Shown here in pieces: positions 1 to 9,661 of a DNA stretch of 64,000 nucleotides. Both the position numbers and the translations under genes were made by a program. The stretch covers positions 14,880,001 through 14,944,000 of the forward strand of contig NC_135251.1 of the NCBI RefSeq assembly GCF_964204865.1, read 5' to 3'. Positions within the stretch are counted from its first letter, which is position 1. Every line of letters starts with the position of its first letter. Below the pieces are notes generated by a model, which saw only the letters and a list, made by a program, of their open reading frames with translations, was not told the origin of the DNA and searched no databases. Source of the stretch: Styela clava. Lineage: Eukaryota.

Positions 1-524
1 ACGCCGGTTTCTCCAACCATGAAGCCGACTCCAGTGTCAACTAAAAAGCCATTTGTCGCGTCTAAAAAACCATCACCTAAGAAACCAATTACACCAAGCA
101 AACCCCCAAAAATTCCATCGAAGAAACCCGAGACGCCGGTTTCTCCAACCAAGAAGCCGACTCCAGGGTCAACTAAAAAGCCATTTGTCGTGTCTAAAAA
201 ACCATCACCTAAGAAACCAATTACACCGAGCAAACCCCCAAAAATTCCATCGAAAAAACCCGAGACGCCGGTTTCTCCAACCATGAAGCCGACTCCAGTG
301 TCAACTAAAAAGCCATTTGTCGCGTCTAAAAAACCATCACCTAAGAAACCAATTACACCAAGCAAACCCCCAAAAAGTCCATCGAAGAAACCCGAGACGC
401 CGGTTTCTCCAACCAAGAAGCCGACTCCAGTGTCAATTATAAAGCCATTTGTCGTGTCTAAAAAACCATCACCTAAGAAACCAATTACACCGAGCAAACC
501 CCCAAAAATTCCATCGAAGAAACC
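1..524 (+). repeat. Coding tandem repeat, 132-bp (44-aa) unit, 4 copies, probably continuing upstream of the window
   Basis: Units start ACGCCGGTTTCTCCAACC at 1, 133, 265 and 397; peptide TPVSPT(M/K)KPTPVSTKKPFV(A/V)SKKPSPKKPITPSKPPKIPSKKPE. Confidence 0.95.
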
Positions 525-3500
525 CATTTCTCCGGTTGAAAAACCTAGAAAACCAACAGAAAAGCCAACAAAAAAACCATTATTACCAAGGAAACCATTG
601 AGAAAACCCGGCGCTGGCAAGAAACCTACATTACGAAGGAAACCTACTGGATCCAGACGAAAACCAGGCGTGGCTCCCAAAAAGCCAGCCACTCCGTCTA
701 AAGCACCTGCAAAAAAGCCAACCGCTCCAACGAGAGGGCCTCTGAAAAAGCCTGTTACAGGGAAAAGACCTAATTTACGCAGAAGGAAACCATTAGGAGC
801 TAGAAGGCGACCAGGCGTAGCTCCCAAGAAGCCCATCGGAACTATAAATAGGCCAACCCCAGTAAAACAAAAGCCTGGTGAAACTGCCAAAACACCTAAC
901 GTTCTGATAAAACCAACTTCTGTGATTGAAAAGCCAGTAACAACAGCCACTGCGACAAAGGAACCAACAAAAGAAATAATTATACAGACCACAGAACCAC
1001 CTACGTCGCCAAAATTGTCTCCCACTACAACAAAAGCAACCGTATCAACAATTCAGCCTAGCACAACCACAAAAGAATTGAAAAAAACAACCGTTGCAAC
1101 CACTATTCCTATTGTGGCGACAAAGATACCAACTGAAACCAAAAAACCAACCATTCCGAGACAAGCTCCTGCAAAAAAGCCAACCGCTCCAAAACGAGGG
1201 CCACTGAAAAAGCCTCTCACAGGAAAGAGACCCAATTTACGCAGAAGGAAACCATTGGGAACTAGAAGACGACCAGGTGTGGCTCCTAAAAAGCCTACCG
1301 GCACTACGAAGCCAGTTCTAACCCGACAAAAGCCTAGTGAAACTGTCAAAAAACCTGAAGTTCCGACGAAACCAACTACTCCAATTCAAAAGTCAACAAC
1401 AACTGCGACAAAGGAACCAACGACAGAAACAATTTTACAAACCACAGAACCACCTACTTCGCCAAAATCAACGACATCATCGACACAGAGATCTGTTTCT
1501 GTCACGGAGAAACCAGCAGTCACTAAAAAAACAGTCACGCCTAGTAAAGCACCTACAAAAAAACCGGTAGTTACAAGAAGGGGACCCCTAAAAAAACCTG
1601 TTTGGGGAAAAAGGCCAGCTTTATCTAGAAAGAAACCTATTGCTGGTATTAAGAAACCGGGAGAAATTGCAAAGAAGCCCGTGGGTACCAGAAAGAAGCC
1701 AGGTATGGCCAAGAAAAAACCGGGTCTATCTGTCAAGAAGCCAGCGGGTGCCCAAAAGAAACCGTTTGTTGGTAAGAAAAAGCCTGGAATCCAAGGTAAA
1801 AAGCCTGGTTTGGCTCGCAAGAAACCATTACTCGCCAGAAAGAAGCCTGGCTTTGGTAAAAAACAACCTGTTAAAAAGCCGCCAATAAAACGACGACCTG
1901 TACCAACTAAAAAGCCTATTAAAAAACCTTTGCCCGGAAAAGGTAAATTGGGATTAAAACCTGTTGCCAAAGGACGAACCGGACCTAAGCCTGTAGTCGG
2001 AAAAGCAATAAAAACTCCTACAACAACAAAATCAGCGGCAGTAAGTACAACAGAAGAACCAACTACTACTATTGCGCCAACCACAACTGAAATCACAACT
2101 ACTAGAAAAACAACCACCACGAAACCAACAACCACGACCCCCAAAACTAGGCCCACAATGCCAACTTACCGCGCATTACAACCAATAACGCGACGACCAG
2201 CTTACCCACGCCGACCCACAACTCGTCCACCTCCTCGATTAGCAGCACGAGGTCGACTTGGAGCCAACTCTGGATTCCGCCCACTTGCCCCCGCAAGGCC
2301 ACCGATACGAGCCCGCCCGTCACTCCCAATTTTCCGTCCTCTTGTACCATTGAGTAACCGACCCATATTGCCAAGACCCGTGGGTACGTTTTCACCCGAG
2401 AGTGTTGCAATATTGAAAAAAGTTCCAAATGTACCGGGAAAAGAATTAGATCAGATAGATGATAAATTTGCTGTGGCGAAAGATGGAGATGCATGGCAAG
2501 GGATGGATGATGGATTGAATTATAAGCCTCAACTGACTATTAACAAAACAGTATATGGTTGCCCATACTACGAATCAAATATTACAGTTTTTAGCTTTTG
2601 GCCAGGAGGCTTCAATGCAATGGTAAATTTCTCTCGTCTAACGAAACCAATGATGAATGGATGGATAGTGAAAATACAATTCGAGTCACCAATACTTGAT
2701 ATTGAAACCCACGTTGTTAATTTCTTCATCGCCACAGACGACAGAAAAACCGTTGCGTTTTTGCCTAAGCCGTATATGGCAGTACTTCATTATAATCAGG
2801 TAAGTGCGATATTGGTGTATAAATTTTTCATATTGATAACTTGGTTAATATTATAACATATACAAATCAAAATACAACATACACAATATAAAATTTGTAT
2901 CACATATATTATGTCAACTATTTGAATTTTCGCAAATTTTGCAGGATTTGACAGTCGCCTTTATTGGAAAGGTTGGCAATGAAGACATAAATGTGCCCCG
3001 TGGCAGAGCGTTGCTCATGGGAAAATGTACTGACGACATACTCGCTGGCAAAGTTGTTGGAAACATGTTTCAAGGACAAAAAGTACTAGAAAAACTTGGA
3101 AACGGCACTAAAGCAAAAGAGTGAGTATCGATGTATTTTTATTTTATTTTTTTCATTACATCATCTGTGAAATTTCCACACAATTATGAAGAATCATTCA
3201 GAAACTTATTTATAACTTGCATTTATATGTACATTTGAAAAATATTGTTTTAATTCCAGGGTTCCAAGCGCTCCAACAAGACCTCCAGCAGTTTCAAGAG
3301 CGACAGCCACTGAGCAAACTCCAGCTCCAAGAAGACCAGGAGCGGCAGGAGCTGGAGTCAGGCGGCCCGGTGCGGCAGGAGCTGGAGCCAGACGGCCCGG
3401 AACGGCTGGAGCTGGAGCCAGACGGCCCGGAACGGCAGGAGCTGGAGCACGACGACCAGGAACAGCAAGACGCCCTGGAGCAGCACCCCGACGAACCGCT

Positions 3501-6500
3501 CGGCCAAGATCAGCATTCAAGCCTCGTCCCGGGAATATCTGGCCCGCAAATAGATGCTTGGCAAAATCTGCTAATGGTGTCCTTCCAGAAGGAGGATTAA
3601 CAAGACCAAAATGGTCTAAAAGCTCAAGCAAAAGTAACCATAACAAGTCTTTAATTTTATCATAAATTTACAAGATTTGTTGGTTTAGTTTCTCAATCGT
3701 GAACAAAAACGCAAAATTTTGTATATATATATCAAATATGCGGAAAAATATCAATACTTGAAACTTGAATTTGGCGATGCTTTGAATGAATTAGGAATTT
3801 TGGTAGAATGATAGCAATAATTTGAAGTCAATTTCCTGCTTATTGGTCGCTTCGTATTACAAGACATAGAACATCATTTACATCATCATATTATCATCAT
3901 TTGTTTCGCTTCATTATAAACACTGTCAAAAACCTCATCTACATTATCTATATTTTACCTTTCATTTACACAGAATCAATCTATGATTACAACGAAGTTC
4001 TGCATAAATCTGGACTTTTCTACATGGCTCAGAAATCTGGCAAACTTCCTAAAATATTCCCAATACCTTGGAGAGGCGACTCTGCACTGAAGGATGGATG
4101 TAACACTGGGGACGCCTTGTTCGGAGGACTTTACAGTGGTAAGTTTGAGATTAACTTCTTTTACAATCGATAATGTTTAGTAATACATAAATGAATTATA
4201 TCTAGCCTAATCCAATTACAATAACGTATATGTATAATAATTTTGGCAGCTGCGTAATTTTGAATATAGACCTCTTCTCATTCATAAGATAAGTAGGTTG
4301 AGCGAGTCCAAACATATAAATCAGATATATATAGCTTCTGTGATCATCCGGAGAGCAAGAGCACGCATGATGATCCCGCATTTTAAATCTGTATATTTCG
4401 TGTTCTGATGAGTTGTCAACGACACCATGGATGTGACTGCAATTTGCTTATTCAACGCTGAACATAAAAACATTGTTATATCATCATAATCACTATGTTT
4501 CGATAATTTGGCCCACTGCTCACAAAAAAACTATTCTGATCAACTTTAGGTGCTGGTTACGAAAAGTCTACATTGGCTATTGCATTTACAACAACTATGC
4601 TTGCTTGGGGAGGAATTGATTATAAATCAGCATACACTGCCGCTGGTGAATACGACGATCTTGTGAAAATCATTAAAAGTAACGCAAACTATTTGATTCG
4701 CTGTCACACAAGCGCGAATGAGTTAGTGGTTCAGGTCAGTTTAAATTAAAAATGTAATAATATATTTTCATCTCTTGATCTATACTGCGTTCGAACCCGA
4801 ATTGGGCCACCAGTACTCAGTTACCTCACCTTGGGTGTAAAAACTCTGGTACATAATTTATATATAATGTTGCTGGTAGATGAGAATACTTCTGAACAAA
4901 TTGTTGTTTCAAACATTTGCGGTAAATAAAAGTCCAACATATGGACAATCAGTATAGCTGGTATATGACTTAACAACCTTTATTTCTTAGAAATATGGAA
5001 AAAGTAAGTAATAAAATACCAAGTAGTAATGACCATACAACGAAAGAATAATGATATGATTATATAAATATGAAAGAGATGTGCTAACATGTAGAGAAAG
5101 ATGTGACTACACATTACAGCATGCAGCTTACATTGTCAAGCAACAATAACTATCATTTATATTTGTTTCTTGAACTATAGATAGGAGACTATGATTCAAG
5201 TGGAACGAAATGGACAAGGCCAGAAGAGCTGGACGTAGAAGGAAGAAAAATATACAAGATAAATACTAAAAATCCAGGCCAAGATGTTGCTGCTGAAACA
5301 GCGGCCGCTCTAGCTGCAGCAGGATTCATGTTCAAGTCAACAGGTATGTCACCCGTTGAAATAGTTAATAATTTTAATCAATTATTTGTTTTACTTAATT
5401 AAATTAATCACTGCTAAGACATAGATTGTTGATGGATTTAGGGGAATGAACTCGCATAACTTTGCCATGGAGTGTTAATATTTAAATTTCATTTTCTCCA
5501 TGCCTTTTACGTTCATAATAAAGCTGGATAAATCCTATCTTAAACTTTTGTTGTTTTACCCCGGTCTTGCGAAAAATCGGGAAACAAACTGTTAGAAAAT
5601 TTCACTTAATTAATTCCACTGGATTAAAGAAATGGACAAATCATATAAGACAAGCCGAGAGTTGGTTGTTGTTAAATATAATCACATAAGTAATTCAGGA
5701 AGTTCTTTCGGAATTTAGTTGATTTAATGGTAATATGAGCTGGAAGGAGATATCGTTAATGGCATGATGTTATCTTATTCTGTCTCGCACAAAACGACTT
5801 GTCAGAATTTAACTCCGGAATTTTTGTTCAACAGATTCCAAGTTTTCTCAAGAATGTTTGCTCCACGCCAGGCAATTGTACAGTTTTGCACAGAAATATC
5901 CAGGCAAATATAGTCAAGTCATTCCCTCAACTGCGAACAGATATCATACGACATCTGACACTTTGGATGATTTGGTAAATTAATTATTTAGTATATATTA
6001 TTTATATTACTAAATAGGACATTACAATTCAACGTATTTGGTAGATCGATCATAGCTAAACATAACAGATAGAAATGCTGTGGTTACTCAAATTATATCA
6101 CAGTTAATAACTAGGTAGCGATCGGAGACCGCCGACTTATCGAACTTCCGCATGTTCAATCGCTCTGACTCAATAGCGACACCGCGTGTCCCATCACTTA
6201 TTAAATAATATCTTGCTAATTATACCACATAATTCATCCAAAATCAAGAGGCTTCTGGTCCGAGATATGATGGATGCACATGCAAAATTTGGAGCAGATT
6301 TAACCTCGCTTTCGTGAGATATCGCGTAGCATACGAAAGTGTCTAACAGACAAACAGAAAGACAAATACCTATCAACATACTTATCGATCGAGATCGCTA
6401 AATAATAAATTTGACTCGGTTTCCTCAAGTAATCTATTCTATTTTTCACGCGGCCAATAAACCCAATGCAGGCTATATTTATTACTATCTTGATGACATT

Positions 6501-8666
6501 TTTACCAAAAAACAACGAATGTGGCTGAAAATCAGAAAATTTGTTATTATTATGATACAAAGTAAAAATAAACTCAAACTCTTCAGCGGGCACAGCGGCA
6601 TTTAATTTTTGCGAATATTTTTATATTAACTTAAAATTTCCTGCTCATTTCAGGTGTGGGCAATGCTTTGGATGGGTAAAGCTACAGGAAATAAAGCATA
6701 TTTTGAAAGAGCAGAAGCTATGTACAAGAAAATCACCACAAGTCCTGTAAACCTGTTCTACTGGGAAGATAAAACAAACGCATTGCCGGTATGTTTTGTC
6801 GATAATATTTTGCATATTGAAGTCCTATTAAAATAACCAAATTGTGAAAGTCTTGTGGAAGTATACTCAGCTCCAAGTTTGCTGGCTGAAGATAAGCCAG
6901 TTAGATTAATGCATAATGCAATGCATATTTATATTAATTTAGTTTCTGTATTTTCATACTTTCATACATGCAAATTCATACTTTTGCCGAATGAATGTGT
7001 CTAACGATCTTTTTTAATAGCGAAGGACGTTTATGTAAATTTTCAACTATTGAAAAATCATAACATTCAGAAAATCGTTAATTCCATTTATTTACTGAAT
7101 TAATTGGAAATTATTGAATTTTCAGATATTGTTAGCCAAATTCACGAAAAAGAAGGATTATTTGATAGAGTCTAGAAAATTGATAATCAAACTGGCGAAG
7201 AATGGAACGCGAACACCGAGCAAACAGCTTTGGTTACATGAAAAGGGAACAAACATGCACACGGGTAATTTTGTTAAAATACATTCTCATTACTATTTTC
7301 AAACTCTTGAGAAGTATTAGTTTATCTTATGAGAATGGATAAATGTCCCAATTCCTATTTGGAAGACAACTACAGAATGCGTCATGACAATGGGAAAGTC
7401 AAGTCGGCATCGGATTTAGGCGCTAATAGAACTATATTCGATTATGTGTGACCAGAAAATCGGCAAACAAACTTCATAAAAGACTACTTTGTTTTATTCA
7501 AAAGTATTTTTTATTAAAATTTTATAGCAAACTCTGCGTTTTTGGCACTGCAGACAGCAATGATATATAAACGCTTTCCGTTCGGATCAATAGCAGCATC
7601 ATTTGCAGAGGAACAACTTCATTTGCTTCTGGGTGACGGTGAACGTAGTTACGTTGTCGGATTCGGTAAGAATTACCCGAAACGTCCTCATCATATGGCA
7701 AGGTAAATGACTTTATTGTTTGTAAGATATTTCTTGCATTCCCCAATGATAACAAGAACCCGGCTTGTATTTAGGGAGTCTATAGCTTGGGGATATATTA
7801 GATTTAAATATAATATTAGTCGAGACGTGATATTGCAAATTATTCTAAGGTGCATGGTGGGGGTTGACGTATAATAGGCATAATTAACTTAGGTACCATA
7901 ATATTACATTTTTAAGAAGTCAGTGTATTACGCAGTACGGTGGTTCATTTATTGTTTCACAACGCTTCGTTTTTTAAATCCTTGCTAGTTGTGTAACTCG
8001 TAGTATTACTGTACTCGGAGGTATTCTTCTGTACTGTCAGGAACCTACTACTGAGAGTTATATTCCTGCTTATTAGTGATGAATAACTAACAAATATAAT
8101 ACCTTAATTTTCAGTTCATGTCTTGATCCACCCGCTAAGTGTGATGCTTCTCGTTTACGTATATCAGCTGACAGTCCACATACATTGTATGGAGCCTTGG
8201 TCGGTGGACCTGATCAGCAAGGAAAGTGAGTACAATTAACTTATTTGATGAAAATATTTTGGTTAGAACTGAGTATATACTTGGCTTACGGAATATTAGC
8301 AGAATGAACAACAACCTTTTAATCCTTCACAGTTAGTTTTTTTTATATATTTATAGCAACCCAAAATTTCCACAAGATACATTTGTTATTAATACGATTT
8401 CTCAGGTGTTTAATCGAAATAGGTTTTACAGATAATGATTGACGACACAACTGTTAATATTCTTTCATTCTTCATTACCATACAGATACAACGATTACAT
8501 TACGGAGCAGATTCAAAACGAAGTAGCCATCGATTTTAATGCTGGATTCCAATCAGCTATAGCAGGGTTACGAGAAATGCAACTCCCGGGAAAATATCTG
8601 ATAAAATCCTCGTCAAACCAGTTGCGTAGGGTGGGACAACCTGTTCGAAAGAACAATGCAGGATAA
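1..8666 (+). CDS. 5'-partial multi-exon gene: Lys/Pro/Thr/Arg-rich repeat region + CBM2-like domain + RRPG/AGAG linker + GH9 (endo-beta-1,4-glucanase fold) domain, probably catalytically inactive
   Basis: Exons 1-2799, 2945-3120, 3260-3633, 3974-4138, 4550-4734, 5181-5343, 5835-5974, 6654-6788, 7126-7264, 7528-7702, 8115-8225, 8486-8666. All junctions are GT..AG with matching phases (4743 nt, 1580 aa + stop), and the frame is open from base 1. GH9 motifs: YDYNEVLHKSGLFYMAQKSGKLP, WRGDSALKDG, TMLAWG, PGQDVAAETAAALAA, RSYVVGFG..P.RPHH, LYGALVGGPD, NEVAIDFNAGFQSA. Confidence 0.9.
2560..3000 (+). other. CBM2-like carbohydrate-binding module, split by intron 2800-2944
   Basis: ITVFSFWPGGFNAMVNF...MNGWIVKIQFESPI...DLTVAFIG resembles the CBM2 pattern W-x-G-G-F ... 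GW-x-V-x-x-x-F ... F-x-G and sits N-terminal to a GH9 domain, as in other invertebrate CBM2-GH9 proteins. Judged by eye. Confidence 0.65.
3330..3480 (+). repeat. Coding 30-bp (10-aa) repeat RRPG(A/T)AGAG(A/V) in exon 3 of the GH9-like gene
   Basis: The spliced frame (different from the ORF-track frame) reads RRPGAAGAGV RRPGAAGAGA RRPGTAGAGA RRPGTAGAGA RRPGTARRPGA. Confidence 0.85.
6111..6405 (-). mobile_element. Helentron-associated non-autonomous element (HINE/DINE-1-like), family 1, intronic
   Basis: Homologous to the copies at 10985, 14741, 15723 and 61935: shared core (GGCTTCTGGTCCGAGATA, GCAAAATTTGGAGCAGATT), (CAGA)n-like tract, subterminal ACTTATCGA repeat and CTAG-TT 3' end. Confidence 0.7.
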
Positions 8667-9661
8667 ACAAATATATTTTATGAGATTGGAAAATCAGACG
8701 GATTTCTGATAAAATTGATGTTATTGATTACCATATTATTTTGGTTATAGTTAGTTCCACGCCATGAGTGGATGACCAAATATTTGCCTTGCATTTTCAA
8801 TTGAACTGATTGTTTTTCTTGTTGAATTTTTTATGTTCCACATTTTGGGTAAAGTAAGTCTAAAGCATATTGGCCCTTTCTCTGTCAGTCCAGTCAAATG
8901 CGAGATATTCAACTGTCTGGCCTAATTCAATGACACCAATTTTCATTATAGTAAATTAGCAAATTTGCAACAATTTTTCAAATTTTATTTTTAATCGTCT
9001 GCTATGAGATAGATTGTGACTGCTCTTGGTTTTCAGGCATGCATTTCAATCAATATAAGTTGTTTCATGAGACCGTATACTAAAAGGGTTGAGTCAATAA
9101 TAAGCTCCATTATAAATGTCTGTTATATGAAAAACAGATTTTTTTATATGCTTAGCACTACTTGAAACAATTTGAGATTGGTTTATCACATTGCCTCAAG
9201 AAGCGGAAAAATGGTTGTGTATATTAATCACATTGATAATTTTTATTTCAAATCCCCATGTTCTTTAGGTGAATAAAACAACAAACACATATTCAAATAT
9301 TTATCTGTTGAGAACTATTGGGTGTAGAACAGAATATCAACGTTTGATTCAATTATAGGTCCATTAAATCTGCAGGAATAACCAAGAACTTAATTGAAGC
9401 CTAAGAACATTTTGTTCTTTATAAACTTAAGTAAAAATTGGTAGCATAACGTTCAGTCCAAAACTACCACTTTACATGTGGTATGGATAATTTGGTAGGC
9501 TGTAAACCCGAAAAGTATCAAGCACATAAAATGAGTTACTTACGTCAAGAAATATGATATATACAACTTAGTGCTGAGCGAGACGGTTCTACAAAGTTAG
9601 AAGAAACAGAAACTTTCAGTCAGCCTAATCCATAACATCACGAGGCCCTGTACCTGTAGAC

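What the first reader, a model, noticed from the sequence alone, without database searches (positions are those of the whole stretch)
3974..8666. Intact GH9 cellulase fold with the catalytic-base motif erased (pseudo-enzyme)
Seen: across the 4138/4550 junction the protein reads GGLYSGAGYEK, where GH9 enzymes have GGYYDAGDxVK, so both aspartates are replaced (D>S, D>G). Other conserved cleft residues also differ: DH.YW > SGTKW, WG.LR > KGTNM, PHHR > PHHM, R.DY..NE > ITEQIQNE. The general-acid Glu (NEVAIDFNAG), the structural motifs and the nine GH9 exons are intact with no stops. Established: inverting GH9 enzymes use the DAGD aspartates to activate water. Inference: this is a maintained non-hydrolytic glucan binder or scaffold rather than a decaying gene.
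Basis: partly seen in the sequence, partly recalled or inferred. Interest (0 to 1): 0.85.

Follow-up and report, generated by a model that had tools for sequence, protein, structure and literature searches.

The report
Dead cellulase domain in tunic protein
In the sea squirt Styela clava, a cellulase (GH9) domain that has lost its catalytic residues but kept its fold forms the expressed, conserved C-terminal end of a 3032-residue secreted matrix protein, so it most likely acts as a non-cutting module in the only animal group that makes cellulose.

Summary
Nine exons (window 3974-8666, + strand) encode a complete GH9 domain, colinear with Pfam PF00759 (1-443 of 444) and with termite endoglucanase 1KS8. 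Both DAGD aspartates are replaced (D54>S, D57>G). D123/H124, Y211, W301, R305, the Arg of PHHR, R405 and Y408 are also replaced; only the acid Glu remains. RNA-like contigs from three studies carry every predicted GT..AG junction, including 4138/4550. No DAGD-coding stretch exists at the locus.

This is not a stand-alone gene. It is the C-terminal domain of a 3032-aa secreted protein (P0270): signal peptide, NtA-like domain, Sushi-like region, acidic mucin, Lys/Pro polycation, divergent CBM2, Pro/Gly/Ala/Arg linker, GH9. The genome is Styela clava, a cellulose-making tunicate.

A Clavelina lepadiformis protein has the same NtA-CBM2-GH9 order, is the sister in the tree (100/97) and is also catalytically dead, sharing several derived replacements. 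The inactivation is therefore old and the domain is maintained.

About 12 of 21 GH9 domains in this genome lack a catalytic carboxylate; the scan's first readers flagged similar pseudo-cellulases on two other pieces of this genome.

Loss of hydrolysis and any glucan binding are inferred, not assayed. I found no paper describing this.

The parts
1..2799 (+). 3' part of one giant coding exon. It begins upstream of the window at G000:C2:14876659 (L054:359). It encodes an acidic Thr/Ser/Glu mucin-like block, then a Lys/Pro-rich polycation with 132-bp (44-aa) repeats, then the first part of a CBM2-like module (about 2542-2799).
   Evidence: Open frame of 2065 aa; tandem repeat; identical to P0270; CBM2 likeness from hhalign, 97.7%, E 2.3e-12; Pfam CBM_2 only E 0.028; 2799/2945 junction seen in RNA contigs.
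2945..3120 (+). Exon encoding the C-terminal strands of the CBM2-like module.
   Evidence: Junctions 2799/2945 and 3120/3260 seen in RNA-like contigs; aligns to the Clavelina P0011 CBM2-like region.
3260..3633 (+). Exon encoding a Pro/Gly/Ala/Arg-rich linker with 30-bp (10-aa) repeats. It carries in-frame 6-nt length polymorphisms.
   Evidence: 6 bases left out at 3405, 6 put in at 3461, both in run X5.
3974..4138 (+). GH9 exon 1. It ends with GGLYS plus one base. Ser at 4135-4137 takes the place of catalytic Asp54 (1KS8 numbering).
   Evidence: Pfam positions 1-54; PDB alignments; junction with 4550 seen in two studies.
4550..4734 (+). GH9 exon 2. It starts (G)AGYEK. Gly at 4555-4557 takes the place of catalytic Asp57.
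   Evidence: An ortholog fragment, P0001, is 77% identical and also has Gly here.
5181..5343 (+). GH9 exon 3. Ser-Gly at 5199-5204 replaces the conserved Asp-His of the DH..W motif; the Trp is kept.
5835..5974 (+). GH9 exon 4. Thr replaces the conserved Tyr (Y211 of 1KS8) before the DEL motif.
6654..6788 (+). GH9 exon 5.
   Evidence: Carries a V>A polymorphism at 6748.
7126..7264 (+). GH9 exon 6. KGTNM replaces WG.LR (W301>K, R305>M).
   Evidence: No Pfam hit on its own, but it aligns within P0270; junctions seen in RNA contigs.
7528..7702 (+). GH9 exon 7. PHHM replaces PHHR.
8115..8225 (+). GH9 exon 8.
8486..8666 (+). GH9 exon 9 with the stop codon. ITEQIQNE replaces R.DY..NE. The general-acid Glu is kept at 8520-8522. 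A 29-aa tail follows the domain.
8667..8740 (+). Start of the 3' UTR. The RNA contigs run on beyond 8740.
   Evidence: table 8.

Best explanation
Window 3974-8666 encodes the C-terminal domain of one large secreted Styela clava protein (P0270, 3032 aa). The domain order is signal peptide, NtA-like (NRG2_N) head, Sushi-like region, acidic mucin block, Lys/Pro polycation, divergent CBM2, Pro/Gly/Ala/Arg linker, GH9 fold. The GH9 fold is complete, but its catalytic centre has been dismantled: both water-activating aspartates and most residues around subsites -1/+1 are replaced. It therefore most likely cannot hydrolyse beta-1,4-glucan. The inactivation predates the split of Stolidobranchia (Styela) from Aplousobranchia (Clavelina), and the domain has been kept under protein-level constraint since then. 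It is a pseudo-enzyme module, not a decaying gene.

Shown here: the sequence state, splicing and expression, linkage to the upstream exons, orthology with an equally dead Clavelina protein, and the neighbouring CBM2-like module.

Inferred: loss of activity; secretion into the tunic or extracellular matrix; and the working model. In that model the CBM2 plus the remodelled GH9 cleft hold the C-terminus on cellulose microfibrils, the polycationic and mucin rod and the NtA-like head engage other matrix or cell-surface partners, and the protein cross-links or organises the cellulose matrix. I put about 0.85 on 'dead and maintained', and about 0.4 on the sub-claim that the GH9 cleft itself still binds a glucan.
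For: The exon model is identical to the C-terminus of P0270. Pfam gives GH9 at 2574-2997 (355 bits, positions 1-443 of 444) and NRG2_N at 36-112. The 1KS8 alignment at E 9e-104 gives the residue map. All 11 junctions appear in RNA-like contigs of three studies and are absent from the DNA run, and a 4455-nt contig joins the upstream exons to the GH9 3' end. No DAGD-like peptide is encoded in any frame of 3200-8800. Clavelina P0011 matches colinearly in NtA (38%), CBM2-like (35%) and GH9 (45%). In the tree, P0270 and P0011 are sisters at 100/97, and with a third NtA-Sushi-GH9 protein (P0218) at 96/89, inside a tunicate clade at 99/98. P0270 and P0011 share derived states: D57>G, Y211>T, R305>M, D54>S/T, W301>K/R. 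P0270 keeps 88 of 115 family-conserved columns, and the losses cluster in catalytic and cleft motifs. Among S. clava protein records there is 1 substitution in the 434-aa GH9 domain and 0 in CBM2, against 27-30 elsewhere. In the laid coding part there are 4 synonymous and 3 non-synonymous differences. The CBM2 likeness scores hhalign 97.7%.
Against: No activity or binding assay exists. The acid Glu is kept in S. clava, although it is Arg in Clavelina. A Glu two residues after the lost Asp57 (YEK) could in principle act as a migrated carboxylate. Several residues that contact the sugar in active GH9 enzymes (W301, Y408, H124, Y211) are replaced too, so canonical chain binding in the cleft is doubtful. 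The domain evolves about 3.4 times faster than a canonical GH9 ortholog pair of the same two species (path 1.95 against 0.58). dN/dS could not be computed. The tissue and the location of the protein are unknown.
Confidence: 0.8

Rival explanations
1. The GH9-fold domain is maintained but no longer binds carbohydrate. It would serve instead as a protein-protein interaction or purely structural module, for example docking another matrix protein, or acting as a decoy or regulator for active cellulases or the cellulose synthase complex. All cellulose binding would then come from the CBM2.
For: Many cleft residues that contact sugar in active GH9s are replaced. Some replacements are conserved between Styela and Clavelina (G, T, M, K/R), which suggests a remodelled site that is itself constrained.
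Against: A CBM2 next to the domain, and the ancestral CBM2-GH9 pairing in animals, fit a carbohydrate context. Several conserved Trp residues of the fold are kept. No partner is known.
Confidence: 0.3
2. The domain is still a glycosidase that uses non-canonical or migrated catalytic residues, possibly on a different substrate.
For: The general-acid Glu is kept. A Glu lies two residues after the lost Asp57. Reviews note that some apparent pseudoenzymes have migrated catalytic residues (abstract of PMC10211241).
Against: Both base aspartates are lost, as are Y211, H124, W301, R305 and the Arg of PHHR. The Clavelina ortholog lacks the acid Glu as well, and has Val where Styela has the nearby Glu.
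Confidence: 0.06
3. The exons are a decaying remnant carried along on the transcript without function.
For: The branch is long, and the Pfam score is lower than for active GH9s (355 against 460-530 bits).
Against: All nine exons have intact frames and precise splicing in three studies. The domain is 45% identical to an ortholog in another ascidian order, with few gaps, and is the best conserved of the three shared domains. It shows fewer amino-acid polymorphisms than the rest of the protein.
Confidence: 0.03

Closest known systems
Animal GH9 endo-beta-1,4-glucanases (termite NtEgl 1KS8, earthworm EF-EG2 3WC3/8IHW, Perinereis 4ZG8)
   Same: Same family and fold. The alignment is colinear over the whole catalytic domain at E 1e-89 to 1e-104. 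The intron-containing gene structure is shared with the active paralogs of this genome. The pairing with a CBM2 is also seen in molluscs, cnidarians and Ciona.
   Different: Both DAGD aspartates and most active-site residues are replaced. The domain sits at the end of a 3032-aa mucin-like protein with an NtA-like head, instead of being a roughly 450-750-aa digestive enzyme.
Clavelina lepadiformis 'cellulase' / LOC143461127 (P0011, P0151)
   Same: Ortholog. It has the same NtA-like, CBM2-like and GH9 order, is the sister in the tree at 100/97, and has the same kind of catalytic loss with shared derived residues.
   Different: It is much shorter (822-1177 aa), without the giant mucin and polycation blocks. 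It keeps PHHR but has lost the acid Glu (Arg). It is annotated only as cellulase or uncharacterized.
Chitinase-like lectins (GH18 pseudo-chitinases such as CHI3L1/YKL-40 and Ym1)
   Same: Same principle: a glycoside-hydrolase fold kept after loss of the catalytic residues and used for non-catalytic roles (abstracts of PMC4195342 and PMC13637049).
   Different: A different family and fold (GH18 TIM barrel against the GH9 alpha/alpha-6 barrel). Those are small soluble proteins. Glycan binding is documented for them and not for this domain.
GH6 domain of tunicate cellulose synthase CesA
   Same: Another cellulase-family domain in tunicates that lacks its active-site aspartate and is kept within a cellulose-related protein (stated in PMC10334666). 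The GT2+GH6 locus is present in this genome.
   Different: It is of bacterial origin by horizontal transfer, is membrane-bound and is fused to the synthase. The GH9 domain here is of old animal ancestry and sits in a secreted matrix protein.

Membership tests
Glycoside hydrolase family 9 (Pfam PF00759) | Full-length sequence match to the GH9 catalytic-domain profile and to solved GH9 structures | tested here: met
   P0270 residues 2574-2997 match at 354.9 bits over profile positions 1-443 of 444. 1KS8 matches at E 9e-104 over chain residues 2-428.
Glycoside hydrolase family 9 (functional cellulase) | DAGD motif: two aspartates that position and activate the nucleophilic water (role recalled from the GH9 literature) | tested here: not met
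   The motif reads S-G-A-G at the positions of D54-A-G-D57. D stands at these columns in 148 and 139 of 157 GH9 domains.
Glycoside hydrolase family 9 (functional cellulase) | General-acid glutamate in the NEVA motif | tested here: met
   E2985 aligns to E412 of 1KS8. It is not conserved in the Clavelina ortholog, which has Arg.
Glycoside hydrolase family 9 (functional cellulase) | Other conserved active-site residues: DH..W, Tyr before DEL, WG..R, PHHR, R.DY | tested here: not met
   The changes are D123>S, H124>G, Y211>T, W301>K, R305>M, PHHR>PHHM, R405>I and Y408>Q.
Glycoside hydrolase family 9 (functional cellulase) | Hydrolysis of beta-1,4-glucan | not testable with these tools
   This needs an assay of the recombinant protein.
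Pseudoenzyme (maintained catalytically deficient homolog) | Enzyme fold without the catalytic motif, expressed, and conserved in orthologs | tested here: met
   Fold and motif loss. Spliced RNA in three studies. Dead ortholog in another order. Low amino-acid polymorphism.
CBM2 cellulose-binding module (Pfam PF00553), for the neighbouring module | Profile match to CBM2 | tested here: inconclusive
   Pfam gives E 0.028 and 15 bits, below the 24-bit cut-off. A profile-profile comparison against Pfam-positive animal CBM2s gives 97.7%, E 2.3e-12. Binding was not tested.
NtA-like / NRG2_N domain (PF25518), for the N-terminus of the same protein | Profile match above the curated cut-off | tested here: met
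   P0270 residues 36-112 score 43.4 bits against a cut-off of 27. The region is 38% identical to the Clavelina ortholog.

The most novel reading that the evidence does not exclude
Ascidians have repeatedly converted cellulase (GH9) domains into non-catalytic modules that organise animal cellulose. This protein would be a conserved tether whose NtA-like head holds the epidermal or matrix side, while its CBM2 plus remodelled GH9 cleft grips tunic cellulose microfibrils. The GH9 pseudo-enzymes would then be to tunicate cellulose what chitinase-like lectins are to chitin.
Probability: 0.3. Interest if true: 0.8.

Novelty: new variant of a known kind. Interest (0 to 1): 0.65.

Why it matters
Tunicates are the only animals that synthesise cellulose. 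Beyond CesA and GH6-1, almost nothing is known about the proteins that organise it into the tunic. This work shows a conserved, expressed GH9 pseudo-enzyme joined to a CBM2, a polycationic and mucin rod and an NtA-like head. It also shows that about half of the expanded GH9 repertoire in this genome has lost catalytic carboxylates. Together these give concrete, testable candidates for the protein side of the animal cellulose matrix. They would also be the first GH9 example I could find of the path from glycosidase to non-catalytic module that is already known for GH18. Finally, it is a warning for annotation: these proteins are labelled 'cellulase' or 'endoglucanase' in databases.

Tried and rejected
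1. Stand-alone GH9 gene: rejected. The exon phases, a 4455-nt RNA contig and P0270 all link it to the upstream exons.

2. Alternative exon restoring DAGD: rejected. Only one E1/E2 junction is seen, and no D[AGS]G[DE] or GG.[YF]D peptide is encoded in any frame of 3200-8800.

3. Decaying pseudogene: rejected (see rival explanations).

4. A homolog search with the 927-aa part of the big exon found nothing. The 2047-aa reference then recovered only the gene's own product, P0270.

No orthologous DNA could be fetched, so dN/dS was not computed.

7. No structure prediction of this domain was run. P0270 exceeds the 1200-aa limit and the joined exons have no single reference, so that step was left out. 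Retention of the fold rests on the full-length alignments to Pfam and to solved structures.

8. The joined spliced model was never sent to a search tool. Exons were searched one by one by reference. The exons were joined only inside scripts: to check identity with the database record P0270, and to classify the polymorphisms. P0270 was then used by id.

9. Two of the fourteen key columns (labelled R.DY) were mis-indexed. For those residues I rely on the 1KS8 alignment.

10. Paper searches for inactive GH9 or tunic GH9 proteins found no description. An Oikopleura preprint only notes GH9 expansion and expression in house-producing cells.

11. The listing of cluster members gave no species names for the fragment orthologs.
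Full report
**What is in the sequence**

Reading 3700-9000 and tracing splice sites gives nine exons on the + strand:
- E1 3974-4138
- E2 4550-4734
- E3 5181-5343
- E4 5835-5974
- E5 6654-6788
- E6 7126-7264
- E7 7528-7702
- E8 8115-8225
- E9 8486-8666 (stop)

All have GT..AG borders, compatible phases and no internal stops. I searched each exon by reference. Eight of the nine match Pfam Glyco_hydro_9 in colinear order, covering profile positions 1-443. Exon 6 is too diverged to score alone.

**Residue map**

Exon-wise alignments to solved structures and the full alignment of the database product to termite endoglucanase 1KS8 (E 9e-104, chain residues 2-428, only small gaps) give this map:

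| 1KS8 position | State in this domain |
|---|---|
| D54 | S |
| D57 | G |
| D123 / H124 | S / G |
| Y211 | T |
| W301 | K |
| R305 | M |
| Arg of PHHR | M |
| R405 | I |
| Y408 | Q |
| E412 (general acid) | kept |

The role of the two aspartates in activating the water in inverting GH9 enzymes is established knowledge that I recall from the GH9 literature; I did not test it. Among 157 GH9 domains collected here, D stands at these two columns in 148 and 139. I then took the 127 domains that keep all three carboxylates and found 115 columns that are at least 85% conserved among them. This domain keeps 88 of those columns. The median for those sequences is 110 and the minimum is 85. The changed columns cluster in the catalytic and cleft motifs.

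**Expression and splicing**

Contigs of three separate studies (runs X1, X5, X6) behave as RNA. They cover the exons and skip the introns at exactly the predicted places: 2799/2945, 3120/3260, 3633/3974, 4138/4550, 4734/5181, 5343/5835, 5974/6654, 6788/7126, 7264/7528, 7702/8115 and 8225/8486. All are GT..AG. A DNA run of the same organism (X8) covers the introns and shows none of these joints.
- The 4138/4550 junction is seen in two studies.
- Only faint intron-retaining contigs exist (depth 2-10, against about 300-480 for the spliced contigs).
- A scan of all six frames of 3200-8800 finds no DAGD-like peptide. No alternative exon can restore the motif.

**The domain is part of a much larger gene**

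Upstream lies an open frame of 2065 aa, followed by two small exons (2945-3120 and 3260-3633). Their phases lead into GH9 exon 1. One 4455-nt RNA contig joins these exons to the GH9 3' end.

A homolog search with the big exon returned the gene's own product, P0270 (3032 aa, on a contig of 31,344,463 bp, the length of this window's contig). Its last 1574 residues equal my exon chain exactly.

Pfam finds an NtA-like NRG2_N domain at 36-112 and GH9 at 2574-2997 (355 bits). By inspection the N-terminus looks like a signal peptide. It is followed by a Sushi-like Cys pattern, a basic patch, about 1000 aa of acidic Thr/Ser/Glu mucin-like repeats, and about 900 aa of Lys/Pro polycation.

Before the GH9 domain lies a module that Pfam scores only weakly as CBM_2 (E 0.028). 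A profile-profile comparison with Pfam-positive animal CBM2 domains scores it at 97.7% probability, E 2.3e-12.

**Organism**

Three lines of evidence name the organism:
- The genome (377 Mb) carries a GT2 domain and a GH6 domain 2 kb apart on one strand. That is the tunicate cellulose synthase arrangement.
- A protein named Styela clava sits on a contig whose length equals that of G000:C6.
- The best matches are tunicate proteins.

I take the genome to be Styela clava.

**Conservation**

The Clavelina lepadiformis protein P0011 (822 aa, annotated 'cellulase') matches P0270 in three colinear blocks:

| Block | Identity | E-value |
|---|---|---|
| NtA-like | 38% | 2e-19 |
| CBM2-like | 35% | 8e-16 |
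| GH9 | 45% | 4e-104 |

In a careful maximum-likelihood tree of 41 GH9 domains:
- P0270 and P0011 are sisters with support 100/97.
- A third NtA-Sushi-GH9 protein, P0218 (source unnamed), joins them at 96/89.
- All three lie inside a tunicate-only clade at 99/98.

P0011 is dead as well: TAGG for DAGD, N-S for D-H, T for Y211, R..M for W..R, and Arg for the acid Glu. Shared derived states (Gly at D57, Thr at Y211, Met at R305, Ser/Thr at D54, Lys/Arg at W301) place the inactivation before the split of the two ascidian orders.

Exon-2 fragments from other sources share the clade signature, including P0001 (77% identical, with Gly at D57).

The Styela-to-Clavelina path is 1.95 changes per site for this pair. 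It is 0.58 for a canonical GH9 ortholog pair of the same species. The domain therefore evolves about 3.4 times faster than a working enzyme. Even so, the pair aligns with only 15 gapped positions, which neutral decay over that span would not leave.

Within S. clava:
- Four protein records differ at 28-31 residues in total. Only one of these lies in the 434-aa GH9 domain and none in the CBM2.
- The RNA contigs differ from the genome at 4 synonymous and 3 non-synonymous coding sites.

Both results point to constraint, but the counts are small.

**Family context**

The genome has about 21 GH9 domains. My reconstruction of the E1/E2 junction and the other motifs shows that about 12 of them lack at least one of the three catalytic carboxylates.
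- Asp changes: DAAS, DAGN, TGGG, IAGD, HSGD, DGGG, NAGD, AGGD.
- Acid Glu replaced by Q, K, H, A or S.
- Some are double-GH9 proteins conserved in Ciona and Clavelina.

Loss of catalysis in GH9 domains is therefore a recurrent theme in this lineage. This gene is, together with one other domain (TGGG), the most thoroughly dismantled case. First readers of the scan flagged similar pseudo-cellulases on two other pieces of this genome.

**How it most likely works**

Shown: a secreted-type, multi-domain protein ends in a CBM2-like module and a complete but catalytically stripped GH9 fold, and this arrangement is old.

Inferred:
- The domain does not hydrolyse cellulose.
- The C-terminal pair associates with cellulose microfibrils.
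- The long charged rod and the NtA-like head bind other matrix or cell-surface components.
- The protein thereby cross-links or organises the tunic.

Whether the GH9 cleft itself still binds a glucan is open, because several sugar-contacting residues are replaced. The conservation of some replacements suggests a remodelled site that is still functional. It could bind a glycan or a protein.

**Known and new**

Pseudo-glycosidases are a known kind, for example the GH18 chitinase-like lectins and the inactive GH6 domain of tunicate CesA. In the held library I found no description of an inactive GH9 domain or of this protein family. The S. clava genome paper does not mention cellulases. An Oikopleura preprint notes GH9 expansion and expression in house-producing cells but treats the genes as cellulases. 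I class this as a new variant of a known kind.

**Limits**

- The structure of this domain was not predicted. P0270 is over the size limit and the joined exons have no reference. The joined model was never sent to a search tool. It was joined only inside scripts: to compare it with P0270, and to classify the polymorphisms.
- The paralog peptides used in the trees were chained from tblastn pieces and are approximate.
- The tissue of expression is unknown, because the run identities are coded.

Noticed in passing
G000:C16:18870675-18889146 (L046-L049): Four GH9 domains lie in tandem on one strand, with DAGD states NAGD, DGGD, AGGD and DAGD. The acid Glu is replaced in the first three (Q, Q, Q) and kept in the fourth.
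   Followed up: partly
G000:C8:20010226-20021666 (L045+L044, = P0152) and G000:C2:29034356-29039939 (L035+L036): These are two genes, each with two GH9 domains in a row, and all four domains lack at least one catalytic carboxylate. The C8 type has orthologs in Ciona (P0156) and Clavelina (P0154), and each domain groups with its counterpart. This is an old double pseudo-GH9 family.
   Followed up: partly
window 6150-6550 (intron 4 of the GH9 part): A very highly repeated element sits here. Summed contig depth in the DNA run reaches about 430,000, against about 57 in the flanks, and it is also high in the RNA runs. Many loose ends carry ATCGATAAG-like motifs. It is probably a high-copy mobile element or satellite inside the intron.
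   Followed up: no
window 3339-3467: A 30-bp tandem repeat (4.3 copies) encodes a 10-aa Pro/Gly/Ala/Arg unit in the linker exon. Run X5 carries in-frame 6-nt length differences at 3405 and 3461.
   Followed up: partly
window 1-525 and upstream (L054:359-6499): A 132-bp tandem repeat encodes 44-aa Lys/Pro-rich units. The same exon switches from an acidic Thr/Ser/Glu mucin block to a strongly basic block. Most amino-acid differences among the S. clava records, and a 55-aa length difference, lie in this low-complexity part.
   Followed up: partly
G000:C9:16177301-16180164: A GT2 (Glyco_trans_2_3) match and a GH6 match lie 2 kb apart on the same strand. This is the tunicate cellulose synthase CesA locus. 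It is the only GT2_3 match and the only GH6 match that each search reported in the genome.
   Followed up: partly
G000:C18:16869538-16869786 and G000:C14:17446937-17447164: Two further NRG2_N / NtA-like matches occur elsewhere in the genome. I did not check whether they belong to other GH9-bearing proteins such as an ortholog of P0218.
   Followed up: no
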